From Isurus oxyrinchus (lineage: Eukaryota), in NCBI GenBank assembly GCA_026770705.1, contig JANJGN010000071.1, positions 930,001-994,000 on the forward strand: DNA of 64,000 bases, given 5' to 3'. Each line of letters opens with the position of its first letter. Within the stretch, counting starts at the first letter, position 1. Of this stretch, positions 5,675 through 44,858 are shown piece after piece. The notes beneath the pieces were generated by a model that searched no databases, was not told the origin of the DNA, and saw only the letters and a program-made list of their open reading frames with translations. The translations under genes were made by a program, and so were the position numbers.

Positions 5675-5714
5675 ATGATCGGGAAATCTTACTTCCTCCT
5701 GTCACTTCTCCAAG
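5675..5714 (+). CDS. Gene B: signal-peptide exon (exon starts at 5633)
   Basis: Acceptor tttctctttcag|; ATG gives MIGKSYFLLSLLQ; phase-1 donor CAAG|gtaata. Identical coding sequence at 25941-25980. Confidence 0.85.
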
Positions 5715-7109
5715 GTAATAACATCATCAGCTTGGACAGATTTATGGTTAATAGTCTTTGTAAAAGATCATTCTTATTGAGCTGTGATTGGGAAACGATT
5801 CAGCAGTGAGCCAGTGTACAAACACACACCAAGTCCCATTCACCCATCACCCCTGTGCTCACTGATATACACTGACTCCATGTCTGACAGCAGAATTGGA
5901 GGAGAGCAGACATCTCAGAGGGTTTTAGGGTTGGAGGAGGTTACACAGATAGAGAGTGTAGAGGGGTGATGGTGTGGTAAGAAATCGATGATGAGAATTT
6001 GAAATTTGAGTCATTGATGTACTGGGAGTCAGTGTAGGTCAGTGAGTGACAGGGAAGCGATCGGCTGAATAGAGAATCAGGGATAAAAACTGGGGGATGA
6101 AGTCTATCCTGATGCTAGGACACGGATAACAATGCCCTGAAATTTTGTGTCTTTTGCTGATCTAAGTCAGGACTTCCCATGAAGACAACACATCAGCTCC
6201 TAGAATAGACAGGCTGTTCAGTGTCACACTTCCTGTCCATTCTCACCATGCTAGATACTTCAATAAGGGAGCAAGATAACTGAAAGAGACAAGGGAGGCA
6301 AAGCTGTCTATATGTAGAACTGTCAAATATTCTGAGTTATCATGATTGTCTCTGATCTGCTGCAGAGTTTAAATTTCACAGAATCTGAGCACTTTGCAGC
6401 TCAGAGAGAGACCATTGACTCACTGCCTGAAAGGGCGGTGGAAGCAGATTCAACAGGAACTTTCAGAAGGGGAACTGGATAAATACTTGAAGGGGACATT
6501 TTGCAGGGCTGTGGAGGAGAGAGCAGAGGTGAGAGTGGGACTAATTGGACAGATCTTTCAAAGGCCCAGCGCAGGCTCGATGGACCAAATGGCTTCCTTC
6601 TGTTCCAGATCATTCTACAATCTGACAAATTAAGCCCCACATCAATAACTCTTCAGGCTCCCGCTGCAGGGATGGATCTTTGAGAAGGACAGGGAACAAG
6701 AGGTTTCTGGTAACATTTTCATAATTCTTGACAATTACATAAATGTATAGATCTGTTGAATATTTAAGTCTCTAAAGCATAGAGGTAATCTGCTGTTACG
6801 CCCAGGTCTTGTGGTGGGAACCTTGTCTGGAGGTGTCTTTAATTGCTCACATTGATCTGTGGGATTGTCATTCATCGATGTTGCCCCTTGTTTCAATTGG
6901 CATTTTACCCTTGATGCAACTGGGGAGGCTTTAAACTAACATGGCAGGGGATGGGATCCCAAGAAGAGGTTGACCAAAGGGAGATGCACAGCCAAAATTA
7001 GAAGAGAGAGCAAATGAACGTGGAAGGCAGAGAAATTATTGGCAGAAGATAGAATGGCAAAGTTGGATTGCAATTATTTTAATGCAAGGAGTCTGACAGA
7101 CTTGCATTC

Positions 7110-10383: not shown

Positions 10384-10384
10384 G

Positions 10385-11712: not shown

Positions 11713-12087
11713 TTGGACTATCACAAGTGTGGAAAGTCAACACTCCACGAGAGGTGACAGCGCAGGAAGGTTCGTGTGTACAGATTCCATGTAATTACAG
11801 TTATCCATCATATTTAGTAGCGAGATCACCAGTCGGAATCTGGTATATGAGAAGGAATTGGGAAACATGGAATGAACGGTCTATAGCCTTTCACTCCAAG
11901 GATCATAATCGCGAGTTACCACAGTTCCACCATCGGACCCGGCTGTCTGGAGACCTGAAAGATGGTGACTGTTCCCTGATTATAAACAATGTCAGATGGG
12001 AAGATGCAGGATATTATTTATTCAGAACAGATTTTGACAGCAGGAATAGATACAACGACCGTCCTGAAACCCAGCTTCATGTTTCTG
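11713..12087 (+). CDS. Gene B: V-set sialic-acid-binding domain exon V1
   Basis: Acceptor ctccgtag|, donor TCTG|gtaagt. Siglec hallmarks: GSCVQIPC, GDLKDGDCSL, no F-strand Cys, and the essential-Arg motif YLFR. Confidence 0.9.
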
Positions 12088-15374: not shown

Positions 15375-15743
15375 TTGCACTGTCACATGAATGGAAAAGT
15401 GACACTCCACGAGAGGTGACAGCGCAGGAAGGTTCGTGTGTACAGATTCCATGTCATTACAGTTATCCATCGTGTCTGGAAAACCAACCGCGAGGTGGAG
15501 TCTGGTTTAATGACGAGAAACAGATTCCCTGGGCTCCCATTGCCTTTCACTCCAAGGATCACAGTCATGAGTTACCACGGTTCCACCATCGGACCCGGCT
15601 GTCTGGAGACCTGAAAGATGGCGACTGTTCCCTGATTATAAACAACATCAGACGGGAAGATGCAGGACCTTATTTTTTCAGAATAGAATTTGACAATGGT
15701 CCGAGCCATAACTATTACCCTGTAACCCAGCTTCACGTTTCTG
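15375..15743 (+). CDS. Gene B: second V-set exon V2
   Basis: Acceptor ctccccag|, donor TCTG|gtaagt. Contains SCVQIPC, DCSL and YFFRIE (essential Arg); open frame. Confidence 0.9.
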
Positions 15744-17054
15744 GTAAGTGCTGTGTTATAATTACTCAACAATTCACACTCAACACTCAATGGGAAATAA
15801 CACAAACTGTGATGTTTACATATTAACACAAAACACAGCTTATTATAACACACTGTCTGATTCTCAATAACCGGGTGATAACTTCCAGTTCAGTCCTAAA
15901 GCAACCTCTAATACTCACTTTAATATCAATGATTAAATGTATTGCCTGTGTCCATCAATGTTATCAGGTTATCCACTCCCATCAGTCTACCTCATGCTTT
16001 TTAAATGTCTAACAATTTGACAAAAGAAGGATGTGCATTCCTATAGCGCCTTACACCACCTCAGCAAACTTCAAATCATTTCACAGACAATGAAGAAATT
16101 CTTGAAGTATAGTCACTAACGTGGCAGTGAGTTTGTACACAGGAAGCTCCCACAGAGAGCAATGGGATCAGTGACCCAGATCTCTGAGAGAATGATGAGC
16201 CAGGGTTCCATGAGCTGTGGGCTGCTCCATCACCCACACCCCAGTGTTGGCAATTCAAGGGTCTGGGAGTGAAAGTGTATTCAGCTCAGTGACACATTCC
16301 TCACCAAGTTTGGAAATAGGAAAGTTGCTGCTGATTGTTGTAACCTCTCAGTTCCCATCTCATCCTTGGAAACCTGATTTCAAAATACAAAAGCAATTCT
16401 CGCATTTCCATAGCGCCTTTCACCACCTCAGGACGATACTAAATCGATTCACAGTCAATGAAGTGATTCTTGAAGCACACATTCTCCCCACTCTCTGGGT
16501 AAAGAAGTTCCTCCTGAATTCCCCATTGGATTTATTAGTGAGGATCTTATATTGTCAGCCTCTGGTTTTGTTCATTGTGAGGAGTGGAAACACTCTCTCC
16601 ATGTCTACTCGATCAAAACCTTTCATTACTTCAAAGGTCAAATGAGGTCACCCCTCAACCTTCTCTGTTCAAGAGAACAGAGACCCAGCCTGTACATCCT
16701 CTCCTGATAGGTAAAGCCTCACATTGCTGAAATCATCCTTGTGAAGCTTTTTACCACCCTCTCCAGTGTCTCTATATCCTTTTCCAAATGCTGAGTCTGT
16801 TCTCCCCGAGCTGTGAGCTGTTCCTCCACCCTCACCCAGTCTGGTCAAATCAAGGGTCACTGAGTGAGAGTGTATTAATCTGAGTGACAGAGATTCAACA
16901 AGTGTAAAAAGAGACAATTCTTTAATGATCATTGTAACCTCTCAGTTCTGATATCATCCTTGTAAAAGTGCTTTCTCTTGTGGGACTGTGACTTCTATTT
17001 GAACTGATGCTTCACGTTATATTTCTCTAAAAGGATCCATTCTCTGTCTGTTAG

Positions 17055-17342
17055 ATTTCACAGATAAACCCACGATATTCCCTGCTGAAATTATTGCAGG
17101 AAAGCATGTGGATGTAAGCTGCACCTTCAACACAACGTGCAATGGAACAGTCTTAACCTGGGACACTCCCACTGACGTACCTGGATCAGTCTCAAACACT
17201 GTAACTCAGCATGGTGTCACTCTGACCTATACTTCTGTTCTGACCCTGATCCCATCACTCAAACACCACGGACACACTCTCAGCTGCAGAGTGAGATATC
17301 CATCTGTTTCATCGGAGCGGACCCTCGTACTAACTGTGCTAC
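17055..17342 (+). CDS. Gene B: C2-set Ig domain 2 exon (9-nt in-frame deletion of AAP)
   Basis: DFTDKPTIFPAEIIAGKHVDVSCTFNTTCNGT-VLTW...LTVL; donor CTAC|gtaagt. Confidence 0.9.
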
Positions 17343-17519
17343 GTAAGTACAAACACCCTTCATTCTACATTAGCTGGAATAGTATCAAATGTGCACAGCA
17401 AGCTCCCACATCCTGCACTTTGTTTATAAACAAACCATTGGTGTTTAACTGGGAAAAAGTGACCCCTGACAGGCAGTACATCCTTACTACTGACTCTCCG
17501 ACAGTGCATCTTGGACTCA

Positions 17520-19250
17520 TAGACTCATAGACACTTACAGGACAGAAGGAGGCCATTTAGCCCATCATGTCCATTCTGGTCAGCAACTCCCTCCCTAAGT
17601 GCATCACCTCACACTTTTCCAGGTTGAAGTCCATTTGCGTCGTGATCATCCCCCCTATATTTACGACCAATTCATTTATATACACCACAAACAGCAAGTG
17701 CCCCAGCACTGAGCCCTGTGGAACCCCACTGGAAACAGACATCCAGTCACAGAAACATCCCTCCACCATCACCCTCTGCTTCCTGCCTCAGCCAATATTG
17801 GATCCAACGTGCCACTTTGCCTTGGATCCCATGGGCTCTTACTTTCTTGGCCTCTCTGCCAAGAGGCACCTTATCAAAAGCCTTCCTCAGCCCATGTCGA
17901 CCACATCAAAGGCATTACTCTCATCAACACTCCTGGTTACCTCCTCAAAAGATTTGATCAGGTTTGTCAAACATGACCTTCCCTTAACAAATCCAGCTGA
18001 ATATCCCAGATTAATCCTTGTCTCTCCCAGTGCAGATTCATTCTGTCCTTCAGAAGTCTTCCTAGTAACTTCCCCACCACCGAGGTTAGACTGACTGGCC
18101 TGTAATTTCCTGATCTATCCCTTCCTCCCTTTTTTAATAATGGGACAACATTAGCCATCCTCCAGTCCTCTGGCACGTCACCTGTGGCCAGAGAGGATTT
18201 GAAAATTACTGCCAGGGCCCCTGATATCTCTTCCCTTTCCGCCCTCAACAGCTTTGGATTCATCTCATTCGGACTTGTGGATTTATCCACTTTTCAGGCC
18301 GCTAAACCCACTAGTACCTCCTCTCTCTGTGTTAATTTCCTCTCATATTTCACTGTCCTCCACCCTGATGTTATACCTGCATCATCCTTTTCCATAGTGA
18401 AGACTGATGCAAAGTATTCATTGAGGACTGTACCCACGTCTTCCAGGTCCACACACACATTACCTCGATGGTCCCTAATCAGCCCCACTCTTTCCCGAGT
18501 TATTCTGCTGCTCTTTACATATTTAAAAAATCCCTCTGGGTTTTGCTTTATTCTACACACCAGTGCTTTCTCATGCACTCTCTTATCTTTCCTAATGTCC
18601 TTTTTCAGTTCCCCTCTGCACTATTTATACTCCTCTAGGGACTCTGCTGTATTGAGCCCTCAGTATCTGCCATAAGCTTCTCTTTTTTCTCAATCCTAAC
18701 CTTTATGTTCCTTGTCTTCCAGGGTTCTCCAGACTTGGTCTCCCTCTTTGTCTTTACAGGAAGATATCTGCTCTGTACTCTCGCTATTCCCTCCTTGAAT
18801 GCCTCCCACTGCTCTGACACAGTTTTATCTGCAAAGAGCTTCTCCCAGTCCACTTGGGCCCAATCATATCTCATCTTAGTAAAATTAGCCTTTCCCCAGT
18901 TTAGAATTTTTATTCCCAGCACAAACTTATCCTTCTCCATAACTATCCTAAATCCAATTGAGTTACAGTCACCATCTCCCCTACTGATACGCTTTCCAAC
19001 TTCCCCGGCGCTTTTCCATATATTAGGTCCAGAACTGTCCCCTCCCTTGTTGAGCTTTCTATGCACAGACTAAAAATCTTCTCCTGGATGCAACTTCAGA
19101 ATTTTTCTCCCTCCCTACCTTGCTCACTAAAGCTGTCCCAGTTAATATTTGGGTAGTTAAAATCCCTGAGTATTACTGCTTTATTATTCTTACACATCTC
19201 TGAAATGTGATCACATGTTGGATTGTCCATCTCTCCCTGACTGTTTGTTG
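17520..19250 (-). mobile_element. CR1 LINE ORF2 fragment
   Basis: GVPQGSVLG, NYRPVSLTSVVGKLL, LNEYFASVFT and LNWGKANF motifs; frameshifted. Confidence 0.85.
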
Positions 19251-19324
19251 GTTTTATATCTTGAGTCTATGAGTTCACTGGTTGAGTAAACTCGAATTGC
19301 ATTCCTTCATATACACTTGTTAGT

Positions 19325-19530
19325 TGATAAAAACAAAAAAACTGTGGATGCTGGAAATCCAAAACAAAAACAGAATTACCTGGAAAAACTCAGCAGGTCT
19401 GGCAGCATCGGCGGAGAAGAAAAGTGTTGACGGTTCGAGTCCTCATGACCTCAGTTCTGTCGAAGGGTCATGAGGACTCGAAACATCAACTCTTTTCTTC
19501 TCCCCCGATGCTGCCAGACCTGTTGAGTTA
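19325..19530. mobile_element. Penelope-terminus-like short element forming a ~60-bp-arm inverted repeat
   Basis: Arms 19389-19450 and 19466-19527 are near-perfect reverse complements. Related sequence occurs at ~27670-27810, ~58460-58555 and at the edge of the GIY-YIG element (~34685-34750). Confidence 0.6.
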
Positions 19531-20239: not shown

Positions 20240-20521
20240 ACGCACCACGGAATCTCTCAATTACTTCTCCAGATATGATTAACGCTTCATCGATCAATAT
20301 AATTGAGGGGAATTCTGCAGAGATAATCTGCTCTGTCGAGAGCTTCCCAGCTTCTAACCTGATGTGGCGACATCTTAATGTCCCAATGAACAGAACAAGT
20401 TCCAACAATGAGCTGTGGTTGGTGATTCCTCACGTTACATCCAGGGATACTGGAGAATATCAGTGTGTGGCAGAGAATGAACATGGAGCAGTGGAGGGGT
20501 TCATAACCATTACTGTGGAAT
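20240..20521 (+). CDS. Gene B: Ig3 (C2/I-set) exon
   Basis: Acceptor tttttag|; APRNLSITS...IICSVESFPASNLMW...DTGEYQCVAENEHG...ITVE; donor GAAT|gtgagt. Confidence 0.9.
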
Positions 20522-22226: not shown

Positions 22227-22366
22227 ACAGTGGAGGAGAGATTCTGCACGTGATCCTGATCCTGGGAATACGAGCTGTGATATTCCTTGTGGCTGTGGTT
22301 ATCACTATCGCTGGAGTCTGTGTCTGGGAGAGACAAACAGTGAAAGGAAGTCGACAGACTGTTTAA
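22227..22366 (+). CDS. Gene B: TM + short tail exon (Arg in TM, no Tyr motifs)
   Basis: YSGGEILHVILILGIRAVIFLVAVVITIAGVCVWERQTVKGSRQTV-TAA, in frame with Ig3. AATAAA at 23347-23352. The spliced ORF is 497 aa with both V exons. Confidence 0.88.
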
Positions 22367-23709
22367 AGATTTGGACAGCAACAATCTCATCATGGAACAG
22401 AAGAACGGCATTTGGCCCATCTACTCCATGCTGTCTCTCTGTAAAGCAATCCAGTCAGTCCCATTCCCCCGTTCTATCCCCGTATCCCTTCAAGTTTATT
22501 TCTCCTCAAGTGTCCATCCAATTTCCTTTTGAAATCGTTCATTGTCTCCGCTTCCACCATCCTCGTAGGCAGCGAGTTCCAGCTCATTACCACTCGCTGT
22601 GTAAAAAAGTTCCTCCTCACATCCCCCTCTGCCCAAAACCTTCAATCTGTGTCCCCCAGTCCTTGTACCATCAGCTAATGGCAACAGCTTCTCTTTGTCT
22701 ACCTGATCTAAACCCATCATCATCTTGTACACCTCGATCAGATCCCCCTCAATCTCCTTTGCTCCAAGGAGAACAACCCCAGCTTCTCCAACCCAACCTT
22801 GTCGCTAAAATCCCTCATCCCTGGACCCATTCTGCTCAATCTCCTCCCCACCCTCTCAAGGACCCTCACTTCCTTCCCAAAGTGAGGAGACCAGAACTGG
22901 ACACAATACTCTAGTTGTGACCTAACCAGAGCTTTATAAATGTTCAGCATAACCTCCCTGTGTTTGTACTCAATCCCTCGATTTATGAAAAGCTTATTCT
23001 TTCCATCAGCACAAACAGCAATTTCCAAGCGGACTCCCATCAGCAGACAGAGTGCAATGAAACATCGGCATGCCTGCTTCTTAATGTACGGAGAGAAACC
23101 TGGAACGAGAGATTGTCCTTCTTCTCCTCAGCAAGCTGAAACTTTTCCTTATACCTGGTGCTCCCCAGTCCTGCTGTGTGGACACATCATAACCACGGCA
23201 TTGTCTGGCTGTGTGCAGCCAACATGGTCGAATAGGAATGAACAGAAATGTGACGTTGCTAAACTCTGTTCTCTGATTGGAATGTGCTTTCTGAATGCTG
23301 CACCTTTTTCATGCTGCGATAGATTGTAAGAAGCATTTGGGTTATGAATAAAATTACATTGATTAACACAAGTGATTAAAATGCTCAGCCTGTTCTGTAA
23401 ATATTTATAGATTAAAATTCTTATTTTGCTGCCAAATTCTTGCCTCAAAGAAAAGCTTCTTGTTGTCACATTTTCTCTATTATATAAATTCCTGTGCCCA
23501 TCCTTATTATAGAAACTTCCAATGTAAACATGTCACATTGTAGTTGCACACTCCTGCCAGTGGTGGTGCCATTCCAAAGCTGTCTTGCTGCACAGACACA
23601 GTGAGAAATATTCTCGACGTGTACATGATGTTGTTGTTACACGGACATCAGGCGGAATCTTGGGCAGTGCCTAGAATGCACTTAGGGCAGTGCAGACCAC
23701 ACTCAGAAC

Positions 23710-25940: not shown

Positions 25941-25980
25941 ATGATCGGGAAATCTTACTTCCTCCTGTCACTTCTCCAAG
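25941..25980 (+). CDS. Gene C: signal-peptide exon (exon starts at 25899)
   Basis: MIGKSYFLLSLLQ; donor CAAG|gtaata. Confidence 0.85.
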
Positions 25981-26842: not shown

Positions 26843-27211
26843 TTGGACTGTCACAAGAGTGGAAAGGTGACACTCCACGAGAGGTGACAGCGCAGGAAGG
26901 TTCGTGTGTACAGATTCCATGTCATTACAGTTATCCAGCACATTTGGAAAACCAACCGCGAGGTGGAGTCTGGTTTAATAATGAGAAACAGATTCCCTGG
27001 GCTCCCATTGCCTTTCACTCCAAAGATCACAGTCACGAGTTACCACGGTTCCACAATCGGACCCGGCTGTCTGGAGACCTGAAAGATGGCGACTGTTCCC
27101 TGATTATAAACAACATCAGACGGGAAGATGCAGGACCTTATTTTTTCAGAATAGAATTTGACAATGGTCCGCGCTATAACTATTACCCTGTAACCCAGCT
27201 TCATGTTTCTG
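26843..27211 (+). CDS. Gene C: V-set sialic-acid-binding exon
   Basis: Acceptor ctcctcag|; SCVQIPC, DCSL, YFFRIE; donor TCTG|gtaagt. Confidence 0.92.
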
Positions 27212-28059: not shown

Positions 28060-28356
28060 ATTTCACAGATAAACCCATGATATTCCCTGCTGAAATTATT
28101 GCAGGAAAGCGTGTGGATGTAAGCTGCACCTTCAACACAACGTGCAATGGAACAGCAGCACCTGTCTTAACCTGGGACACTCCCACTGACGTACGTGGAT
28201 CAGTCTCAAACACTGTAACTCAGCATGGTGTCACTCTGACCTATACTTCTGTTCTGACCCTGATCCCATCACTCAAACACCACGGACACACACTCTGCTG
28301 CAGAGTGAGATATCCATCTGTTTCATCGGAGCGGACCCTTGTACTAACTGTACAAG
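28060..28356 (+). CDS. Gene C: C2-set Ig domain 2 exon
   Basis: DFTDKPMIFP...VSCTFNTTCNGTAAPVLTW...TLCCRV...LTVQ; donor CAAG|gtaagt. Confidence 0.9.
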
Positions 28357-31902: not shown

Positions 31903-31938
31903 GGCAGTGGGGGGTGTTCGTGACCATCAGTGTGGAAG
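31903..31938 (+). pseudogene. Remnant 3' end of an additional Ig3 exon copy
   Basis: gcagtggggggtgttcgtgaccatcagtgtggaa resembles gcagtggaggggttcataaccatcactgtggaa. It is followed by the same CA-repeat and intron block (32481-32600 ~ 33300-33420) that follows Ig3a. Confidence 0.6.
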
Positions 31939-32890
31939 GGTTAGGTTTACAGGTTACACAGACCACACACGCACCAACAGACACACACACACATGNNNNN
32001 NNNNNNNNNNNNNNNNNNNNNNNNNNNNNNNNNNNNNNNNNNNNNNNNNNNNNNNNNNNNNNNNNNNNNNNNNNNNNNNNNNNNNNNNNNNNNNNNNNNN
32101 NNNNNNNNNNNNNNNNNNNNNNNNNNNNNNNNNNNNNNNNNNNNNNNNNNNNNNNNNNNCACACGCANNNNNNNNNNNNNNNNNNNNNNNNNNNNNNNNN
32201 NNNNNNNNNNNNNNNNNNNNNNNNNNNNNNNNNNNNNNNNNNNNNNNNNNNNNNNNNNNNNNNNNNNNNNNNNNNNNNNNNNNNNNNNNNNNNNNNNNNN
32301 NNNNNNNNNNNNNNNNNNNNNNNNNNNNNNNNNNNNNNNNNNNNNNNNNNNNNNNNNNNNNNNNNNNNNNNNNNNNNNNNNNNNNNNNNNNNNNNNNNNN
32401 NNNNNNNNNNNNNNNNNNNNNNNNNNNNNNNNNNNNNNNNNNNNNNNNNNNNNNNNNNNNNNNNNNNNNNNNNNNNNNNTCAGTGCTGCACTGGAGTCTC
32501 GGTGTCAGCTCCGATTCTGTGCTGAAGGAAGGTAAACTCCAGATCAACAAGACCCTGAATTGGATGAGCAACCTCCTTAACAGAGAATTGTAGATTTACC
32601 CCTCAGTGCTCCATCGATCAAATACAATTCATTGCCTGTCCAGCCCTTGGGGACATTCTGAGGATGTGAAAGGGAGTTTCTTTAAATCTGGATGGGCAGG
32701 GTCTCTGGTGGGAGAATGCTCCTGCAGTGTGACAGTTTACATAGGCAGTGCCCATTGTAAATGTGACATAGGAACTTATCTTGAGGGAAGGTGCCTAGAA
32801 ATGCATACAGACATCAGATACAGAGACATGATGCATGGAGTCTTCCTGTGCACTATGTTTGCTCACGTTAAAATCTTTATATGTTTTTAG

Positions 32891-33172
32891 ATGCACCACG
32901 GAATCTCTCAATCAATTCTCTTGATATGATTAACGCTTCATGGATCAATATAATTGAGGGGAATTCTGCAGTGATAATCTGCTCTGTCGAGAGCTTCCCA
33001 GCTTCTAACCTGACGTGGCGACATCTTAATGTCCCAATGAACAGAACAAGTTCCAACAATGAGCTGTGGTTGGTGATTCCTCACGTTACATCCAAGGACA
33101 CTGGAGACTATCAGTGTGTGGCAGAGAATGAACATGGAGCAGTGGAGGGATTCATAACCATCACTGTGGAAT
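32891..33172 (+). CDS. Gene C: Ig3a exon
   Basis: APRNLSINSLDMINASW...DTGDYQCVAENEHG...ITVE; canonical phase-1 splice sites. Confidence 0.9.
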
Positions 33173-33194
33173 GTGAGTTAATGCAAACTTCAAC

Positions 33195-33250
<56 letters not shown>

Positions 33251-34076
33251 CACACACAAACACACATGCACACACACGTGTCAGCTCCCTCTCCTCTCTC
33301 AGTGCTGCACTCGAGTCTCGGTAGCAGCTCTGATTCTGTGTTGAAGGAAGGTAAACTCCAGATCATCAAGACACTGAATTGGATGGAGCAACCTCCTGAA
33401 CAGTGAATTGTAGGTTTATCACCCAATACCCCATTATTCCAAAGCAATTCCTCCATGGTGAAATCTCCGTGAACATCCTGATCATGTGAAAGACACTTTC
33501 TTTTCTTCTAGCCCGACAGTGTCTCCTCTGGTGGAAGGCTGTAATTACAGCGTGACAGTTTACATATCCACACGCAGCAAGAGCTGAGCAACACTCAGCT
33601 TGGGCTGAGAAATGACAAGTAATGTTCACACCACACAAGCACCAGGCAGTGATCATCTCCAACAAGAGAGAATCTAACCATCTCCCCTTGATATTCAATC
33701 ACTTCACCATCGCTGAATCCCCCACGATCAACATCCTGGGGGATGTTAACCAAACACCGAACTGGACCGGCCATAAATACTGTGGCTACAGGAGCCGGTC
33801 AGAGGCTGGGAATTCTGTGGGGGTGCAAAACTCACCACCACCTCCTCAAGGGCAATTAGGGATGGGTAATAAATGCTGGTCTAGATAGATACATCCACTT
33901 CCCATGAATATGCAAAAAGGAACACACTGGCAGTGTCTGTTACAAATGGTGACATAGAAAATCATAATGGGGAAAGAAGCCTTGACATGCACATAGACAC
34001 CAGATGGAGAGAGATGATACCTGGAGTCTTGCTGTGCACTGTGTTTGCTCACAATGAAACTTTTATTTGTATTTAG

Positions 34077-34358
34077 ATGCACCACGGAACCCATCAATTA
34101 CTTCTCTTGATATGATTAACGCTTCATCGATCAATATAATTGAGGGGAATTCTGCAGTGATAATCTGCTCTGTCGAGAGTTTCCCAGCTTCTAACCTGAC
34201 GTGGCGACATCTTAATGTCCCAATGAACAGAACAAGTTCCAACAATGAGCTGTGGTTGGTGATTCCTCACGTTACATCCAGGGACACTGGAGACTATCAG
34301 TGTGTGGCAGAGAATGAACATGGAGCAGTGGAGGGGTTCATAACCATCACTGTGGAAT
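34077..34358 (+). CDS. Gene C: Ig3b exon (tandem duplicate of Ig3a)
   Basis: APRNPSITSLDMINASS...ITVE; canonical splice sites. Confidence 0.9.
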
Positions 34359-34369
34359 GTGAGTGTGGA

Positions 34370-36226: not shown

Positions 36227-36502
36227 ATCCCCCACAGGAGACGATGGTGTCCATCAGCAGATCCTCAGGTGGGATAAGAGAGGGAAGCAATATCACATTA
36301 ACCTGCTCCAGTGAAAGTGTCCCACCGATATCTCATTACACCTGGTTCAGGATCGAGGGGAATACCAGCACCCAGTTAAACACAAGTAGCCGCACTCTCT
36401 CCTTCACTCCTGTAACACGGGAGAATGATGCAGGTTTCTACTGCACAGCGAGGAACCCAGTGGGTAACAGCACCTCCAACATCACCCACCTGAACGTACA
36501 AT
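36227..36502 (+). CDS. Gene C: Ig4 exon (CD22/sialoadhesin-like C2 repeat)
   Basis: YPPQETMVSIS...IREGSNITLTCSSESVPPISHYTWF...DAGFYCTARNPVG...LNVQ; splice sites ttccag| and CAAT|gtaagc. Confidence 0.9.
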
Positions 36503-36854
36503 GTAAGCATTTTACTCCCCCTGTCTCTGCTTAAAACTCAAACACTTTCTGTCTGAGGGCAGCTTCCTTGCTGTGGTTTAGCATAACTAGCATCACCTCC
36601 CTGCTTTTTTCACCCTGCGCCTCTCCGAGATACATAAGGAGATATTAGAACAGGGACTGAAAGCTCAGAGAAAGAGGCCAGATTTTAAGGAGTGTCTGAA
36701 ACGAGGAGAGAGATAGAAATGGAGAGGTTTACGGAGGGAATTCCAGAGCTCGGGGCCCAGGCAGCTGAAGGCACGGCCGCCAATGGTGGAGCGATAGGAA
36801 TCGGGGGATGGTCAAGAGGCCGGAATTGGAGGAACGCAGAGACCTCGGAGGGAT

Positions 36855-37740
36855 GTAGATGCTGGAGGAGGTTACAGAGATAGGGAGTGTTGTGGGGTCT
36901 GGAGGAGGTTACAGAGATAGGGAGGGTTGTGGGGTCTGGAGGAGGTTACAGAGATAGGGAGGGTTGTGATGGCTGGAGGAGGTAACAGAGATAGGGAGGG
37001 TTATAGGGGCTGGAGGAGGTAACAGAGATAGGGAGGGTTGTAGATGCTGGAGGAGGTAACAGAGATAGGGAGGGTTGTGGGGTCTGGAGGAGGTTACAGA
37101 GATAGGGAGGGTTGTAGGGGCTGGAGGAGGTTACAGAGATAGGGAGGGTTATAGGGGCAGGAGGAGGTAACAGAGATAGGGAGGGTTATAGGGGCTGGAG
37201 GAGGTAACAGAGATAGGGAGGGTTGTGGGGTCTGGAGGAGGTAACAGAGATAGGGAGGGTTGTGGGGTCTGGAGGAGGTTACAGAGATAGGGAGGGTTGT
37301 GATGGCTGGAGGAGGTAACAGAGATAGGGAGGGTTATAGGGGCTGGAGGAGGTAACAGAGATAGGGAGGGTTGTAGATGCTGGAGGAGGTAACAGAGATA
37401 GGGAGGGTTGTGGGGTCTGGAGGAGGTTACAGAGATAGGGAGGGTTGTGATGGCTGGAGGAGGTTACAGAGATAGGGAGGGGTGTAGGGGCTGGAGGAGG
37501 TTACAGAGATAGGGAGGGTTGTAGGGGCTGGAGGAGGTTACAGAGATAGGGAGGGTTGTAGGGGCTGGAGGAGGTTACAGAGATAGGGAGGGTTGTGATG
37601 GCTGGAGGAGGTTACAGAGATAGGGAGGGTTGTGGGGTCTGGAGGAGGTTACAGAGATAGGGAGGGTTGTGATGGCTGGAGGAGGTTACAGAGATAGGGA
37701 GGGTTGTAGGGGCTGGAGGAGGTAACAGAGATAGGGAGGG
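36855..37740. repeat. 37-bp minisatellite (ggaggaggttacagagatagggagggttgtggggtct) within an L2-type 3' end
   Basis: About 24 tandem units; related arrays at ~13330-13630 (reverse) and ~62620-62900. Confidence 0.9.
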
Positions 37741-38050: not shown

Positions 38051-38344
38051 ATAAGCCGGAGATTTCCCAGCAGTCGGAGTGCACTCGAAGGTCAGAGGGG
38101 GTCACCTGTGTCTGTGTGGCCACCTCCAACCCACCCGGAGACCTCACCTGGCACCTGCCCAGTGCCAACATCAGTGGTAACCAAACACACGGAGGTTTTG
38201 TGTCGTGGCAGGTCAGAGATGGGCATCTGGTGACTGGTTCCCTCACCCTGATGAGACCCCAGGATGAGGGGGGAGTGATTGCATCCTGCTCGGTTCAAAA
38301 CCCACATGGGGAAGCCATGTTCAAGGTGAATCTGTGGGTCAAAG
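38051..38344 (+). CDS. Gene C: membrane-proximal Ig5 exon (MAG-domain-5/CD33-related type)
   Basis: YKPEISQQSECTRRSEGVTCVCVATSNPPGDLTW...IASCSVQNPHG...LWVK. The C-x8-CxC...SNP pattern is typical of the last Siglec domain. Confidence 0.88.
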
Positions 38345-39228: not shown

Positions 39229-39325
39229 GTAGAGACTCCAGTAAATGGACAGTAGGATTGTTCACGGCTGGGATCATGTTGAGTGTTTTCCTGGCTGGAA
39301 TCTTCATCTTCATCTGTGTGAGAAA
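39229..39325 (+). CDS. Gene C: neutral transmembrane exon
   Basis: Acceptor ttttacag|; GRDSSKWTVGLFTAGIMLSVFLAGIFIFICVRK; donor AGAAA|gtaagt. Confidence 0.88.
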
Positions 39326-40047
39326 GTAAGTCTGAAGATTTAACTTGATTTTAATCTAAACATTTGCTTAGGACTAATTGGACAGTTTTTACAAAGGGCC
39401 AGCACAGGCACGATGGGCTGAGTGGCTTCCTCCTGAGCTGTGAGATTTTAAATTCTTTCATCGAATGTGACTGTCATTGGCATGGCCAATACTAATTGCC
39501 CATTCCCAATTGCCCCTTGAGAAAGAGGTGGTGAGCTGCCTTCTTGACCCGCTGCAGTCCATGTGGTGTAGGTACACCCACAGTGCTGTTAGAGAGGGAG
39601 TTCCAGGATTTTGACCCAGCGACAGTGAAGGAACGGTGATATATTTCCAAGTCAGGATGGTGAGTGACTTGGAGGGGAACTTCCAGGTGGTGGTGTTCCC
39701 ATGTGTCTGCTGCCCTTGTCCTTCTAGATGGTAGAGGTCGTGGGTTTGGAAGGTGCTGTTGAAGGAGCCTTGCTGAGTTGCTGCAGTGCATCTTGTAGAT
39801 GGTACACACACTGCTGCCACTGTGTGTTCGTGGTGGAGGGAGTGAATGTTTAATGTGGTGGATGGGGTGTGGATCAATCGGGCTGCTTTGTCCTGGATGG
39901 TGTCAAGCTTCTTGATTCTGTGCTTTGTGCAGAAGTGATTTAAAGAGACAGTCCAGTCATTGGTGTAAGGTTACAGTGGGGTCTGTGTCTGTGCTGCACT
40001 GACTCTCTGCTATATGATAACCACAGTTTGATATTGTGTTATTGCAG

Positions 40048-40129
40048 GAGAAAGACAGCGATGGAGGAGAGAGTTTCAGGGACCAGTGACATTGCATTGA
40101 CCCCCAGTCCACTCTCTGTGAAGCACCAG
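40048..40129 (+). CDS. Gene C: cytoplasmic exon 1, module A
   Basis: Acceptor attgcag|; RKTAMEERVSGTSDIALTPSPLSVKHQ; donor CAG|gtacag; in phase with the TM exon. Confidence 0.8.
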
Positions 40130-40264
40130 GTACAGGAGCTGTTTACACTCACTCCAAAGCTTCAATCTCAGTGTGTAGACAACACGTGTCCCAGATTCCC
40201 AGCCCAGTTACCCACTGATTTGTACCTGTGGAGTCAGCAATGTTTCAGTATCATGCTGTCTCTC

Positions 40265-41018
40265 TGTTATGACACAGCAACTGGTAAAGACTGTTGTTTA
40301 AAATCCCAGAGGGAAACTTTAAACAACTGTCATAACCTATATTTCCCAGTGGAATGTTTGAGATGCAGCTCTAAATTCAGGAATAAGACCACCAGTTCTC
40401 GAGATGGTTTTATATCAAACTACATGAGCCATTTATTAATTAACACAAGTTAAACATATGCACATGGCTACAAACTAGTATTATCATAACTTTTTAACAA
40501 ATTCCCAAACTAATCTCCTCTAAGATAACCCATAGAATTTAAGCAGACACCCAGGCAAAGCATTTTCACCTCACAAATTCCAAATGAGGTTCCTTTCACT
40601 TTGGATCCTTTGCAGACAGGTGTAGGATTACAGCTGCTTTGATGTTACAAGCGTCTGCTCTGCACACACAAAACTGCTCAAGTTATACCCAGCTCTTCTC
40701 TTTGAATGTAAATTCTAATTGTATCATCAGGACCTTTGAACTCCATCCCTTCAAACAATAAATCCTCTGTCATAGTATCAATTTTATCAATAAAATAAAT
40801 GTTGATTGGTTTAAGATTTCACTCTCAGGTTTTGAATGCTCTGTTTAAAAATACAAATTTTTATGCCTCAGTTTACATCTCAAAACTACTATACATCAAA
40901 TACCCAGACTGGCTGGCTTTAATCCAATTAAAACACACACAGACACACCCACAGACTAAACCCCGATGTGAATAAAAATAATTTCCAATAACATGATATT
41001 TATTAATCGCATCATGAC
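40265..41018. mobile_element. Solo LTR-like element (paralog at ~43186-44117)
   Basis: tgttatgaca...catgaca TG/CA termini; shared by both duplicated modules. Confidence 0.55.
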
Positions 41019-41529
41019 AGTCTCTCTCTCTATCCCAACCTCCCTTTCTTTCTCTCTCTCTCTCTTTCTCTCTCTCTCATCCTCTCTCTGATTACAAGGT
41101 GCATGTTAATGAGCTTCACACCAGACACTTGAGTGCAGAATCCAACTGTCACTCACCAGAACCATTACCGAGGGAGTGCAAGACTGACAGAGGGTCAGTA
41201 CTGAGGGAGTGTTGCACTGTCGGAGGGTCAGTACTGAGGGCGAGCTGCACTGTCGGAGTGTCAGTACTGAGGGAGCGCTGCACTGTCGGAGGGTCAGTAA
41301 TGAGGGAGCGCTGCACTGTCGGAGGGTCAGTACTGAGGGAGTGCTGCACTGTCGGAGGGTCAGTCCTGAGGGAGCGTTGCACTGCCATAGGTGGTATCTT
41401 TCATATGACATGAGAGAGAGGGTTAAACCAACTGAGACACGACTGACATTAACAAGGCTGCACAATAATTTAACCCTATCAGTGCCAGTAAATGATGTGA
41501 GGATAACTTCTGTTTCGATTTCTCTGTAG

Positions 41530-41778
41530 GGTAAACAGAACGTGCTGATTACTGAGCCCCAGAACACAAAGAGAGACGCAACTGGCGAGGGGGAGACCCC
41601 AGCTCCCTGGGGTCTCTCTGAAGATGCAGTGGGAGGCGATGTTGGACATGGGAACCCTGACAAACCTGAAGAGTTTCTCTACGCCAATCCCCAAGTCTTG
41701 AGGATGTCCAGTGGTGATGGGTCTGTCCACAGGGAAGTGGAGACGGAATACGCACAGATCAGGTTCGAGCATAACTGA
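41530..41778 (+). CDS. Gene C: terminal cytoplasmic exon A (degenerate ITIM FLYANP + ITSM TEYAQI)
   Basis: Acceptor ctctgtag|; GKQNVLITEP...EEFLYANPQV...ETEYAQIRFEHN-TGA. AATAAA at 42345-42350. Confidence 0.82.
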   Translation, partial: GKQNVLITEPQNTKRDATGEGETPAPWGLSEDAVGGDVGHGNPDKPEEFLYANPQVLRMSSGDGSVHREVETEYAQIRFEHN

Positions 41779-42967
41779 ATGAGAAATGGGGAGAGTGAGT
41801 GAGGAGGTATGGGGGTGGGGGTAGTGATTGAGATTCCTGGGAACAGGAAACACCCACTGGGGGAGAGGGGGAAAGAGGGAGGAAGGGATGGAATTGGGCT
41901 GCGGTTGGTGTGGTTTGGAATGAAATGCTTCTCCAGAGAGGACTGGATGCTGAGCCATTGGGGATAGAGATTCACTGTCTTTCTCTCTCTCTCTCTCTCT
42001 CTCCCTCTCTCTCTCGCTCTCTCCCTCTCTCTCTCTCTCTCTCTCCCTGTCTCTGTCTTTCTTTCTGTGTCTGTCTCTCATTCCCTATCTCCAGCTCCTC
42101 CTTTAAGATGCCCGTTAATAACTGACTTTGTTGACTCAGCTGTTGGTCTCCTGTCCCTAATATCTCCTCATGTGCCTCAGAGTCAGGTGAAGATGTCACT
42201 AACAATCCCCAGATGAGCCTTAGGACATTTTGCTACATTGAAGGTGCTATATAAATGCAAGTGGTTGTAGTAACTCTGATCTGCTTCGATTAACAATAGA
42301 ACCACAAAGGCTCCTTCGACAGGGAGTGTGTGCAGCAGGGTCACAATAAATACATTGAGCTGTGAGATTTTTAATTCTTTCATCGAATGTGTCTGTCACT
42401 GGTGATGTCAGCATTAATGCCCATCCCTAATTGCCCTTGAGAAGGTGGTGGTGAGCTGCCTTCTTGACCCGCTGCGGTCCATGTGGTGTAGGTACACCCA
42501 CAGTGCTGTTAGAGAGGGAGTTCCAGGATTTTGACCCAGCGACAATGAAGGAACGGTGATATATTTCCAAGTCAGGATGGTGAGTGACTTGGAGGGGAAC
42601 TTCCAGGTGGTGGTGTTCCCATGTGTCTGCTGCCCTTGTCCTTCTAGATGGTAGAGTTCGTGGGTTTGGAAGGTGCTGTTGAAGGAGCCTTGCTGAGTTG
42701 CTGCAGTGCATCTTGTAGATGGTACACACACTGCTGCCACTGTGTGTTCATGGTGGAGGGAGTGAATGTTTAATGTGGGGGATGGGTTGTAGATCAATCG
42801 GGCTGCTTTGTCCTGGATGGTGTCAAGATTCTAGATTCTGTGCTTTGTGCAGAAGTGATTTAAAGAGACAGTCCAGTCATTGGTGTAAGGTTACAGTGTG
42901 CTCTATGTCTGTGCTGCACTGACTCTCTGCTATATGATAACCACAGTGTCATATTGTGTTATTGCAG

Positions 42968-43049
42968 GAGAAAGACAGCGATGGAGGAGAGAGTTTCAGG
43001 GACCAGAGACATTGCATTGACCCCCAGTTCACTCTGTGTGAAGCACCAG
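42968..43049 (+). CDS. Gene C: cytoplasmic exon 1, module B
   Basis: RKTAMEERVSGTRDIALTPSSLCVKHQ; splice sites intact. Confidence 0.75.
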
Positions 43050-44609
43050 GTACAGGAGCTGTTTACACTCACTCCAAAGCTTCAATCTCAGTGTGTAGAC
43101 AACACATGTCCCAGATTCCCAGCCCAGTTACCCACTGATTTGTATCTGTGGAGTCAGCAATGGTTCAGTATCATGCTGTCTCTCTATTATGACACAGAAA
43201 CTGGTAAAGGCTGTTGTTTAAAATCCCAGAGGGAAACTTTAAACAACTGTCATAACCTATATTTCCCAGTGGAATGTTTGAGATGCAGCTCTAAATTCAG
43301 GAATAAGACCACCAGTTCTTGAGATGGTTTTATATCAAACTACTTGAGACATATATTAATTTACACAAGTTAAACATATGCACATGGCTACAAACTAGTA
43401 TCATCATAAATTTTTAACAAATTCTCAAACTAATCTCCTCTAAGACAACCCATTATCTTTAAGCAGACACCCAGGCAAAGCATTTTCACCTCACAAATTC
43501 CAAATGAGGTTCCTTTCACTTTGGTTCCTTTGCAGACAGGTGTAGGCTTACAGCTGCTTTGATGTTACAAGCCTCTGTTCTGCACACACAAAACTGCTCA
43601 AGTTATACCCAGCTCTTGAGTGTAAGGAAGACGGAGATTGATGGGCTCTTGATTGGTCAGGGGATCAAAGGTTAGGAGAGAAGGTGGGAGAATGGGGTTT
43701 GTGAAACATATCAGCCATGTATGAATGGTGGAGCAGACTCGATGGACCGAATGGTCTAATTTCTCCTCCTATATCTGATGGTCTTATGGCTTCTGTTTGA
43801 AGGTAAATTCGCAATGTATCATCAGGACCTTTGAACTCCATCTCTTCCAATAATAAATCCCCTTTTATCGTATCAATTTTATTAGTAATATAAACGTTGA
43901 TTGGTTTAAGATTTCACTCTCAGGCATTTAATGTTTTATTTAAAAATGCAAATTACCACTTTACCTCTTTGTTTACATCTGAAAACTACTATACATCAAA
44001 GCACCCAGACTGGCTGGCTTTAATCCAATTAAAATACACACAGACACACACACAGACTAAACCTCTGTTTAAAAAGACAGTTTGCATTTATAATACAAAC
44101 ATTAATAGATTAATAACACTCTGTCTCTGTCCCTCCTCTCTCCCTCTCTCTCATCCTCTCTCTGATTACAAGGTTCATGTTATTGAGCCTCACACCAGGC
44201 ACCTGTGTGCAGATTCCAAGCCATCACTCACCAGAGCCATTACCGAGGGAGTGCTGCACTGTTGGAGGGTCAGTACTGAGGGAGTGCTGCACTGTTGGAG
44301 GGTCAGTACTGAGGGAGTGCTGCACTGACAGAGGGTCAGTACTGAGGGAGCGCTGTATTGTCGGAGGGTCAGCACTGAGGGAGTGCTGCACTGTCAGAGG
44401 GTCAGTATTGAGGGAGTGCTGCACTGTTGGAGTGTGATAGAGATTAAATTATAAAGAGAGAGAGAAAGCGAGAGAGACAGAGAAAGAGAGTGAAAAAAAG
44501 GGTTAAACCCACTGAGATACGACTGACACTAATGAGGCTGCACAATAATTTAACCCTATCAGTACCAGTAATTGATGTGAGGATATCTTCTGTTTCCATT
44601 TCTCTGTAG

Positions 44610-44858
44610 GGTAAACAGAACGTGCTGATTACTGAGCCCCGGAACACAACCAGAGACACAACTAGTGAGGGGGAGACCCCAGCTCCCCGGGATCTCTCTG
44701 AAGGTCCAGTGGGAGGCGATGTTGGACATGGGAACCCCGACAATCCCGCCAAGCTTCTCTACGCCAACATCAACTTTTCAAAGCTGCCCGGCGGTGACAG
44801 GACTGTGCACAGGAGCGAGGACACGGAATACGCACAGATCAGGTTCCAGAAAAACTGA
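44610..44858 (+). CDS. Gene C: terminal cytoplasmic exon B (ITIM LLYANI + ITSM TEYAQI)
   Basis: GKQNVLITEP...KLLYANINF...DTEYAQIRFQKN-TGA; classic Siglec proximal ITIM and distal ITSM spacing. Confidence 0.82.
   Translation, partial: GKQNVLITEPRNTTRDTTSEGETPAPRDLSEGPVGGDVGHGNPDNPAKLLYANINFSKLPGGDRTVHRSEDTEYAQIRFQKN

What the first reader, a model, noticed from the sequence alone, without database searches (positions are those of the whole stretch)
5675..44858. Paired activating/inhibitory Siglec-like receptor system in a probable shark genome
Seen in sequence: gene B (leader-V-V-C2-Ig3-TM) ends in a TM segment with an embedded Arg (LILGIRAVIFLVAVVITIAG) and a ~13-aa tail without Tyr. Adjacent gene C (leader-V-C2-Ig3a-Ig3b-Ig4-Ig5-TM-tail) has a neutral TM segment plus ITIM/ITSM motifs. 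Gene B's V2 and gene C's V differ at only 9 of 123 aa, both keep the essential Arg (YFFR), and the leaders are identical. Established knowledge: this is the layout of primate Siglec-5/14 and Siglec-11/16, where a basic TM residue recruits DAP12 and gene conversion homogenises the ligand domain against sialic-acid-mimicking pathogens. Inference: an independently assembled paired Siglec system in a cartilaginous fish. I cannot confirm it is undescribed.
Basis: partly seen in the sequence, partly recalled or inferred. Interest (0 to 1): 0.92.

Follow-up and report, generated by a model that had tools for sequence, protein, structure and literature searches.

The report
Shark activating/inhibitory Siglec gene neighbours
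This stretch of a lamniform shark genome holds neighbouring Siglec-type immune receptor genes that share nearly the same outer domains; one ends in an arginine-bearing membrane anchor ("on" type) and the next in tyrosine-based braking motifs ("off" type), a design known from primates, already auto-annotated in many sharks, but found in no paper I searched.

Summary
Gene B is leader-V1-V2-C2-Ig3-TM. Its membrane span carries an Arg, and a 12-residue Tyr-free tail follows. Gene C is leader-V-C2-Ig3a-Ig3b-Ig4-Ig5-TM-cytoplasmic exons. All exons have canonical splice sites and compatible phases. The leaders are identical and V2(B) differs from V(C) at 9 of 122 residues.

The V exons are Siglec-type: the best solved-structure hits are Siglec-5/8/7, CD33, MAG and sialoadhesin, and the binding Arg is kept.

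The N gap lies in intron 3 of gene C, most simply inside a CA microsatellite. No reading frame crosses it.

Gene C matches a zebra-shark RefSeq protein exon by exon. The Arg-TM exon is 78-83% conserved in catshark and bamboo shark, where it is joined to Ig3, to C2, and to other ectodomain types.

RNA contigs show the predicted TM acceptor (22227) in use, but spliced from a paralog-type C2 exon. Gene B's own Ig3-to-TM junction was not seen.

Two corrections:
- Gene conversion is not supported. Introns are also 85-90% alike, dS is about 0.08, and the V tree gives no within-genome clade.
- Gene B's N-terminal domain is V1, only 65-67% identical to gene C's V.

This scan has flagged the same theme at eight or more other places in this genome. 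Adaptor binding and ligand are untested.

The parts
1..248 (+). Gene A (cut by the window start): C2-set exon, donor AAG|GTAAGT
   Evidence: tblastn at 95-96% to the C2 exons of B and C; sequence of the exon end.
574..723 (+). Gene A: 3' half only of an Ig3 exon. The 5' half and its acceptor are deleted.
   Evidence: tblastn covers residues 44-93 only. DNA homology to gene B starts at B 20369, in mid-exon.
2408..2547 (+). Gene A: Arg-TM exon with stop (…VILILGIRAVIFLVAVVITIAGDCVWEEQTVKGSRQTV*)
   Evidence: Identical to gene B's TM exon over the first 90 bases of the exon, from the acceptor on.
5675..5714 (+). Gene B leader exon (MIGKSYFLLSLLQ, phase-1 donor G|GTAAT)
   Evidence: Identical to gene C's leader and to the leaders of shark RefSeq Siglecs.
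11713..12087 (+). Gene B V1 exon (Siglec V-set; Arg kept in YLFRTD)
   Evidence: Pfam V-set 1.7e-13 and Ig_CD22 39.3 bits, above the 27-bit cut-off. PDB sialoadhesin 3.4e-15, Siglec-5 1.6e-14. Splice sites.
15375..15743 (+). Gene B V2 exon (Siglec V-set; Arg kept in YFFRIE; extra Cys in PSCL)
   Evidence: Pfam. PDB Siglec-5 7e-16. Splice sites. 113 of 122 residues identical to gene C's V.
17055..17342 (+). Gene B C2-set exon. It has an in-frame 9-base deletion compared with A and C; donor TAC|GTAAGT.
20240..20521 (+). Gene B Ig3 exon (I-set/Ig_3)
22227..22366 (+). Gene B Arg-TM exon with a 12-aa Tyr-free tail and stop
   Evidence: 78-83% identical to the TM exons of catshark and bamboo shark proteins. 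Use of the acceptor is seen in RNA contigs of 3 runs.
23207..23372 (+). 3' flank of gene B with AATAAA at 23347, homologous to the flank just after tail2 (44884-45052)
   Evidence: 79% over 169 bases. Gene A has the same segment at 3374-3539.
25941..25980 (+). Gene C leader exon
26843..27211 (+). Gene C V exon (Siglec V-set, YFFRIE)
28060..28356 (+). Gene C C2-set exon
31996..32479 (.). Assembly gap (two N runs) inside intron 3 of gene C, flanked by a CA microsatellite and by a 34-base stump of a decayed Ig3 exon (31904-31938)
32891..33172 (+). Gene C Ig3a exon
34077..34358 (+). Gene C Ig3b exon, a tandem copy of Ig3a (96.8% DNA identity)
36227..36502 (+). Gene C Ig4 exon
38051..38344 (+). Gene C Ig5 exon (membrane-proximal; weak Ig_3 and C2-set_2 matches)
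   Evidence: 70% identical to residues 516-611 of P0016.
39229..39325 (+). Gene C neutral TM exon (…WTVGLFTAGIMLSVFLAGIFIFICVR; phase-2 donor)
40048..40129 (+). Gene C cytoplasmic exon cyt1a
41530..41778 (+). Tail exon 1: FLYANP (not a canonical ITIM) plus TEYAQI (ITSM), then stop. AATAAA at 42345.
   Evidence: This tail type is conserved in Carcharodon P0157 (77%).
42968..43049 (+). Duplicated cytoplasmic exon cyt1b
44610..44858 (+). Tail exon 2: LLYANI (canonical ITIM) plus TEYAQI (ITSM), then stop
   Evidence: 89% identical to the tail of Cetorhinus P0003.

Best explanation
The window holds part of a tandem cluster of Siglec-family receptor genes in a lamniform shark. The cluster was built by segmental duplication and by re-use of alternative 3' signalling modules.

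Genes A and B end in a conserved exon that encodes a membrane span with one Arg in its outer third and a 12-residue tail without Tyr. By analogy with Siglec-14/-15/-16, activating KIR/LILR and fish NITR/LITR, I infer that such a receptor signals only through an ITAM adaptor with an Asp in its membrane span (DAP12 or FcR-gamma type) and so activates the cell.

Gene C shares the leader, a V2-type V-set, C2 and Ig3 exons with gene B. It continues into Ig4, Ig5, a neutral membrane span and tails with ITIM/ITSM tyrosines. These would recruit SHP-type phosphatases and inhibit the cell.

Shown here: the exon structures, Siglec family membership by sequence, conservation of both module types across shark orders, and use of the Arg-TM acceptor in spliced RNA of this gene family.

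Inferred only: sialic-acid binding, adaptor coupling, opposite signalling, and any shared ligand.
For: - Intact exons with canonical, phase-compatible splice sites.
- V exons pass the Pfam Ig_CD22 cut-off.
- The best PDB matches are all Siglecs, with the binding Arg and the C-x4-C Cys pair aligned.
- Gene C is colinear, exon by exon with one split codon between exons, with Stegostoma XP_059497404.1.
- The junction codons predicted for B and C reproduce the residues seen in RefSeq shark proteins.
- The Arg-TM exon is 78-83% identical in Scyliorhinus torazame and Chiloscyllium punctatum. Over the same pairs the V domains are 57-72% identical. The exon is joined there to Ig3 (P0006, P0023) or to C2 (P0080).
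- The same exon also ends proteins that RefSeq names CD22-like, CEACAM5-like and sialoadhesin-like in bamboo and epaulette sharks.
- dN/dS between B and C exons is 0.24-0.58.
- RNA contigs join a C2 exon end to position 22227 in 3 runs from 2 studies, and exon depth exceeds intron depth by 10 to 1000 times.
- The 3' flank of genes A and B is homologous to the flank of inhibitory tail2. This fits descent of the activating genes from an inhibitory-type ancestor.
Against: - No RNA contig could be assigned to gene B itself. Contigs over its C2 exon carry the paralog variants (G at 17106 and the 9-base insertion).
- The loose ends shown at the Ig3 end (20520, 20521) run on into another Ig3 exon.
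- The Ig3-to-TM joint was not among the joints shown, and 42 more were not listed.
- A contig with no mismatches runs unspliced across the TM acceptor.
- The Arg sits in the outer third of the span, so DAP12 specifically is uncertain.
- No shark adaptor sequence was available, so no complex test was run.
- B's outermost domain is V1, not the domain shared with C.
- The first tail of gene C lacks a canonical ITIM.
Confidence: 0.72

Rival explanations
1. The two are neighbours but not a true pair. B and C are ordinary recent tandem duplicates with different 3' modules. They need not share a ligand or a cell type, and nothing homogenises them.
For: - Introns next to the shared exons are 85-91% identical, and the 1.2 kb upstream of the leaders is 89.6% identical.
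- Summed dS is 0.077, only modestly below the intron mismatch of 0.10-0.15.
- V, C2 and Ig3 are equally similar, so the ligand domain is not singled out.
- The V tree gives (B_V2,(C_V,Carcharodon V)).
- B carries an extra N-terminal V1, 65-67% identical to C's V. V1 groups with Cetorhinus V1 at 92/96 support, so it is older than the species split.
Against: - Within the genome, V2(B) and V(C) are still each other's closest match by identity (92.6% against 88-90% to Carcharodon).
- Tree support is weak (80-83).
- dS is somewhat lower than intron divergence, so occasional conversion is not excluded.
Confidence: 0.45
2. Gene B is a silent or decaying copy. The expressed activating forms come from paralogs such as gene A, which reads V…C2-TM(Arg).
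For: - RNA contigs over C2 carry the paralog-type letters, and the only TM joint shown comes from a C2 exon ending in AAG, as in genes A and C but not B.
- Gene A has lost the 5' half of its Ig3 exon, which predicts exactly a C2-to-TM splice.
- B's C2 exon has a private 9-base deletion and an unusual TAC donor.
Against: - All six B exons are open with good splice sites.
- dN/dS is below 1.
- Its Ig3-to-TM layout matches catshark P0006 and bamboo-shark P0023.
- Contigs show presence, not absence, and most joints were not listed.
Confidence: 0.2
3. The Arg-TM, short-tail forms do not activate. They act as decoys, as co-receptor partners or as shed forms, and the Arg serves assembly with some other membrane protein.
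For: No adaptor was tested. The Arg is near the outer leaflet. The short tail ERQTVKGSRQTV is itself conserved, which hints at a role beyond a stop-transfer signal.
Against: Established knowledge holds that a lone basic residue in the span plus a short tail is the general signature of ITAM-adaptor-coupled receptors in vertebrates (see PMC6288428 for Siglecs). The exon is more conserved than the ectodomains and is re-used on several ectodomain types.
Confidence: 0.12

Closest known systems
Primate paired Siglecs: Siglec-5/Siglec-14 and Siglec-11/Siglec-16
   Same: Neighbouring Siglec genes with very similar outer domains. One has ITIM-type tyrosines; the other has a basic residue in the membrane span and a short tail (PMC4042635, PMC5701461, PMC6288428).
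   Different: - In primates the 5' exons are kept nearly identical by gene conversion. Here identity is 92-95% in protein, the introns are comparably similar and no conversion tract is seen.
- The shark activating gene has two V-sets in tandem, and the shared V is the inner one.
- The Arg-TM exon is an old, shark-wide module re-used on several ectodomain types. It is not a recent derivative of the partner's TM exon.
- Adaptor coupling is untested.
CD33-related Siglecs of mammals (Siglec-5, -7, -8, -9, CD33)
   Same: - V-set with the F-strand Arg and the Siglec Cys pattern, followed by C2-type domains.
- Tail with a membrane-proximal ITIM (LLYANINF) and a distal TEYAQI motif.
- Clustered, fast-duplicating genes.
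- Best PDB hits are Siglec-5/8/7.
   Different: - Orthology is not shown. MAG and sialoadhesin score almost as well.
- Both motifs lie in one exon.
- Multi-V heads and repeated Ig3 stalk exons.
- The literature places only Siglec-1, -2, -4 and -15 at the vertebrate root (Bornhofft 2018, as cited in PMC9630641).
RefSeq automatic models of shark and ray Siglecs (for example Stegostoma XP_059497404.1, Scyliorhinus torazame XP_072326180.1, Chiloscyllium punctatum XP_072409577.1, Cetorhinus XP_078389734.1, Carcharodon XP_041037177.1)
   Same: Same exon modules in the same order. Gene C is colinear with XP_059497404.1. Gene B's Ig3-to-Arg-TM end equals the ends of XP_072326180.1 and XP_072409577.1.
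   Different: These are unreviewed predictions, named after whichever mammalian Siglec scored best. No publication in the searched library discusses them.
Other paired Ig-superfamily receptor families (KIR, LILR, PILR, SIRP; fish NITR and LITR; skate MDIR)
   Same: Multigene clusters that mix ITIM-tailed members with charged-TM members of similar ectodomain (my own knowledge; MDIR is mentioned in PMC3031540).
   Different: Those families have non-Siglec ectodomains. Here the heads are Siglec V-sets.

Membership tests
Siglec family (I-type lectins) | N-terminal V-set Ig domain of the Siglec type | tested here: met
   Pfam V-set plus Ig_CD22 (PF24518) at 37-39 bits against a 27-bit cut-off for all three V exons. 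The top 17 PDB sequences are all Siglecs, E 7e-16 to 4e-12.
Siglec family (I-type lectins) | Conserved F-strand Arg that binds the sialic-acid carboxylate | tested here: met
   YFFRIE (V2 and C's V) aligns with YFFRVE of Siglec-5. YLFRTD (V1) aligns with YNFRFE of sialoadhesin.
Siglec family (I-type lectins) | Unusual Cys pattern: a B-E intrasheet disulfide plus an extra Cys for a V-C2 interdomain disulfide | tested here: met
   SCVQIPC…DCSL in each V aligns with LCVLVPC…NCSL of Siglec-5. The C2 exons carry SCTFNTTC. This is a sequence pattern only; no structure was made.
Siglec family (I-type lectins) | Binding of sialylated glycans | not testable with these tools
   Needs a glycan array or cell binding with V-Fc fusions.
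CD33-related Siglec subfamily | Cytoplasmic ITIM plus a distal ITIM-like/ITSM motif | tested here: met
   tail2 has LLYANI and TEYAQI. tail1 has only TEYAQI, with FLYANP in place of the ITIM.
CD33-related Siglec subfamily | Orthology or closest relationship to mammalian CD33-related genes rather than to MAG, Sn, CD22 or Siglec-15 | tested here: inconclusive
   PDB E-values for V2: Siglec-5 7e-16, MAG 1e-13, Sn 4e-12, Siglec-15 9e-8, CD22 3e-4. For V1, Sn scores best. No reference-rooted tree was possible with the sequences at hand.
Paired activating/inhibitory receptors | Two adjacent genes with highly similar ectodomains | tested here: met
   V2/V 92.6%, C2 92.8%, Ig3 92-95% protein identity, and identical leaders. 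However, B adds V1 and lacks Ig4 and Ig5.
Paired activating/inhibitory receptors | Opposite signalling modules: basic residue in the TM with a short tail, against an ITIM tail | tested here: met
   The result rests on sequence only.
Paired activating/inhibitory receptors | Association of the charged-TM member with an ITAM adaptor | not testable with these tools
Paired activating/inhibitory receptors | Ectodomain homogenised by gene conversion (as in SIGLEC5/14 and SIGLEC11/16) | tested here: not met
   Exon DNA identity is 95-97% against 85-91% for introns. Summed dS is 0.077. There is no sharp tract. The tree does not pair B_V2 with C_V. The sample is small, so occasional conversion is not excluded.
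Paired activating/inhibitory receptors | Both members expressed | tested here: inconclusive
   Spliced family transcripts are present (C2-to-TM(Arg), C2-to-Ig3, Ig3-to-Ig3), but the contigs cannot be assigned to B or C against their paralogs.

The most novel reading that the evidence does not exclude
Cartilaginous fish have a large CD33-related-like Siglec family. In it, one ancient Arg-bearing TM exon is shared by several ectodomain lineages across at least three shark orders and serves as the activating counterpart to ITIM/ITSM tails. On this reading, paired Siglec signalling arose independently of the primate pairs and long before them, and genes B and C are a working on/off pair for sialylated ligands.
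Probability: 0.4. Interest if true: 0.75.

Novelty: new variant of a known kind. Interest (0 to 1): 0.58.

Why it matters
Reviews place only Siglec-1, -2, -4 and -15 at the root of vertebrates and treat paired activating/inhibitory Siglecs as a mammalian, mostly primate, answer to pathogens that mimic sialic acids. A shark family with the same logic, built from different parts, would show convergent evolution of on/off glycan sensing. Those parts are a tandem V head, repeated stalk exons and a conserved Arg-TM module that is re-used on several ectodomains. The family would also offer an old, independent system for asking what selects for such pairs.

The practical value is limited for three reasons. 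The proteins are already in RefSeq as automatic predictions. This scan has met the same theme at eight or more other places in this genome. Nothing functional is known.

Tried and rejected
- **RNA test of junction 20521/22227.** Only Logan contigs were available. They show the 22227 acceptor joined to a paralog-type C2 end (17339+A to 22225; X1, X2, X5) and C2-to-Ig3. The loose ends shown at the Ig3 end (20520, 20521) run on into another Ig3 exon. Gene B's own junction was neither shown nor excluded.
- **Search for the Arg-TM exon alone.** Only 12 candidates and 2 hits came back; the region is too short for the word index. A wider region worked.
- **One gene with alternative 3' ends.** Rejected. 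B and C each have their own leader exon and 1.2 kb of homologous upstream DNA.
- **A further Ig3 exon hidden by the gap.** Only a 34-base stump without a donor lies left of the gap. A hidden exon cannot be fully excluded if the gap is much longer than estimated. Any such exon would be phase 1-1 and would stay in frame.
- **tail1 as a decaying pseudo-exon.** The dN/dS of about 1 between tail1 and tail2 suggested this. I rejected it because the YANPQV tail type is conserved in Carcharodon and Cetorhinus models.
- **A donor at 22372, suggested by a loose end.** Rejected. The extra letters match gene A's sequence after its stop.
- **Not run.** No structure prediction, because the sequence matches to solved Siglecs were already clear.
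Full report
**What the window is.** It is vertebrate DNA: GC 46%, CpG observed/expected 0.30, eight N runs. Its exon-sized open frames encode Ig domains. The three V-type exons at 11713-12087, 15375-15743 and 26843-27211 match Pfam V-set. They also pass the curated cut-off of PF24518 (CD22-like first Ig domain).

Against all solved structures, the best 17 sequences are Siglecs: Siglec-5 at 7e-16, then Siglec-8, Siglec-7, CD33, MAG, Siglec-10 and sialoadhesin. The alignment places YFFRIE on YFFRVE of Siglec-5, and SCVQIPC…DCSL on LCVLVPC…NCSL. V1 aligns best with sialoadhesin, YLFRTD on YNFRFE. So the Siglec reading is right, and all three V domains keep the binding Arg.

**Exon models.** Leaders with the identical DNA and peptide (MIGKSYFLLSLLQ) start at 5675 and 25941 and end in a phase-1 donor.

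- Gene B continues with V1, V2, C2 (17055-17342), Ig3 (20240-20521) and a last exon from 22227. That exon reads SGGEILHVILILGIRAVIFLVAVVITIAGVCVWERQTVKGSRQTV and then stops at 22364-22366.
- Gene C continues with V, C2 (28060-28356), Ig3a, Ig3b, Ig4, Ig5 (38051-38344), a neutral membrane exon (39229-39325, phase-2 donor), cyt1a (40048-40129) and tail1 (41530-41778). A second copy of the last two exons follows (42968-43049 and 44610-44858).

All junctions are AG/GT with matching phases. The split codons give the residues that RefSeq shark proteins have at the same places, for example …ITVE-Y-SGGEILHV against …ITVQYSRGEILHV in P0023.

One correction applies to the motifs. tail1 reads FLYANP, which is not a canonical ITIM, plus TEYAQI. 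Only tail2 has LLYANI plus TEYAQI.

**The gap.** The N runs (31996-32159, 32168-32479) lie in the intron between C2 and Ig3a of gene C. The left flank (31904-31993) aligns with the end of Ig3a plus the CA repeat behind it (33139-33228). The right flank (32480-32743) aligns with the DNA just past that CA repeat (33299-33566).

The gap therefore sits where the neighbouring repeat unit has a CA microsatellite. Left of it is only a 34-base stump of an old Ig3 exon without a donor. No frame crosses the gap. The zebra-shark protein P0016 goes straight from C2 (137-233) to Ig3 (236-327).

**Relatives.** A full HMMER scan with the V2 exon found 274 representative proteins at E ≤ 1e-10. The best are RefSeq automatic models from Scyliorhinus, Cetorhinus, Mustelus, Stegostoma, Chiloscyllium, Carcharodon, Hypanus, Pristis and others. 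They are named "sialic acid-binding Ig-like lectin 8/10/12/13/14", "CD33-like" or "MAG-like".

Per-exon identity is highest to Carcharodon (90-94%) and Cetorhinus (76-92%), so the source is a lamniform shark. Gene C is colinear, exon by exon, with Stegostoma XP_059497404.1.

The Arg-TM exon is 78-83% identical in catshark P0006, P0080 and P0164 and in bamboo-shark P0023. It is joined there to Ig3 or directly to C2. In bamboo and epaulette sharks the same exon also ends proteins with CD22-like, CEACAM-like and sialoadhesin-like outer parts. It is thus an old, shared module, and it is better conserved than the V domains (57-72% over the same pairs).

Both tail types are also old. The YANPQV type occurs in Carcharodon and Cetorhinus models, and the LLYxNINF type in Cetorhinus.

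**RNA.** Four runs, all kept as contigs, were laid on 17000-22900. Depth over the C2, Ig3 and TM exons is 10 to 1000 times that of most intron bins.

- A joint from 17339 (plus one A) to 22225 appears in X1, X2 and X5. Read with the sequence, this is a C2 exon ending …GTACAAG spliced exactly to 22227.
- Genes A and C have that C2 end; gene B has …GTGCTAC.
- Gene A has lost the 5' half of its Ig3 exon, and its TM exon is identical to B's over the first 90 bases. Gene A or a similar paralog is therefore the likely source.
- Contigs over B's C2 exon read G at 17106 and carry the 9-base insertion, so they too are of paralog type.
- The loose ends shown at the end of B's Ig3 exon run on with ATGCACCA…, the start of another Ig3 exon, as in gene C.
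- One contig with no mismatches (21926-22235) runs unspliced across the acceptor.

So the predicted acceptor is used in this gene family, but gene B's own Ig3-to-TM splice is neither shown nor excluded.

**Pair or duplicates?** The units are duplicated as whole segments. The 1.2 kb upstream of the leaders is 89.6% identical, and the introns next to the V, C2 and Ig3 exons are 85-91% identical. The exons themselves are 95-97% identical.

Synonymous divergence is 0.093 (V), 0.041 (C2) and 0.083-0.099 (Ig3), or 0.077 summed. dN/dS is 0.24-0.58. This is what a fairly recent duplication under purifying selection gives. It is only mildly below intron divergence, and the V exon is not singled out.

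In a tree of shark V domains, B's V1 groups with Cetorhinus V1 (92/96). B's V2 falls outside a weak (C's V, Carcharodon V) pair. Gene conversion is therefore not supported.

B's outermost domain is V1, only 65-67% identical to C's V. Its V2 carries the extra Cys (PSCL) that, in the shark proteins sampled, occurs only in non-first V domains. The activating genes' 3' flank, including AATAAA at 23347, is homologous to the flank behind tail2. This suggests they descend from an inhibitory-type gene.

**Literature.** Searches for Siglec together with shark, cartilaginous fish, elasmobranch, Scyliorhinus, elephant shark and related terms found no paper on shark Siglec pairs. Reviews describe paired Siglecs only in mammals (PMC6288428, PMC4042635, PMC5701461). 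They place only Siglec-1, -2, -4 and -15 at the vertebrate root (PMC9630641, citing Bornhofft 2018).

Earlier notes of this scan report the same theme at eight or more other places in this genome, and they note that automatic annotation already predicts such proteins.

**Verdict.** It overreaches on gene conversion, shared ligand and DAP12.

Noticed in passing
window 5138-5224 and 25413-25490 (+): About 450-540 bases upstream of each leader lies an open, splice-flanked exon (…CACAG|AG…TGG|GTAAGT). It encodes (R)GSSTGRGHSAQAERVGSSSPDEQSDGSW. This is 72-77% identical to the first cytoplasmic exon of a third tail type seen in Carcharodon P0014 and Chiloscyllium P0007, whose tails end in YxN-type tyrosines. 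No matching TM or later tail exons are in the window, so it looks like a relic of a third signalling module.
   Followed up: partly
window 1-2547 (+), gene A: Gene A has an Arg-TM end like gene B's but has lost the 5' half of its Ig3 exon and most of the preceding intron. It should therefore splice C2 directly to the TM exon. That is exactly the joint seen in RNA contigs, and catshark P0080 has the same V-C2-TM(Arg) layout.
   Followed up: partly
window 39434-44873: The 3' end of gene C is duplicated with mosaic divergence. 39434-40697 against 42356-43617 is 95.5% identical. 40695-41793 against 43790-44873 is only 80% identical. tail1 has AATAAA at 42345, just before the second unit starts. 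No canonical signal lies within 540 bases after tail2. A Cetorhinus model (P0182) shows the same doubled cytoplasmic module.
   Followed up: partly
window 59036-59443 (+): A divergent Siglec-like V-set exon (SCVVILCSFDFP…NCSVRIDSLRAEDSDVYY) has sialoadhesin, MAG and Siglec-5 as best PDB hits. Its frame stops just before the expected F-strand Arg. An unclassified open frame (59394-59903, no Pfam match) overlaps its end; I took this for a mobile-element insertion but did not check. Probably a broken exon of a further Siglec gene.
   Followed up: partly
window 15375-15743 and shark proteins P0001-P0006: The Cys in YSYPSCL occurs only in non-first V domains of multi-V shark Siglecs (0 of 10 first V domains, 6 of 13 later ones) and in none of the single-V proteins listed. 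Gene C's single V has His there. This may be a disulfide that ties tandem V domains together.
   Followed up: partly
window 3877-4864, 19790-20110, 23700-25130, 53990-54720, 56600-57270; also 36847-37740: Long minisatellite arrays lie in the intergenic and intronic DNA of the cluster. The first group has a period of about 33 bases and gives spurious open frames such as STDPLTVQHSL. The array in the Ig4-Ig5 intron has a period of about 37 bases.
   Followed up: no
window 21889-22257 and 2151-2438 (+): The intron just upstream of the Arg-TM exon, translated in a frame other than the TM frame, matches residues 599-698 of catshark P0164 at about 50%. Either that RefSeq model reads through a homologous intron, or this intron is unusually conserved between shark orders.
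   Followed up: no
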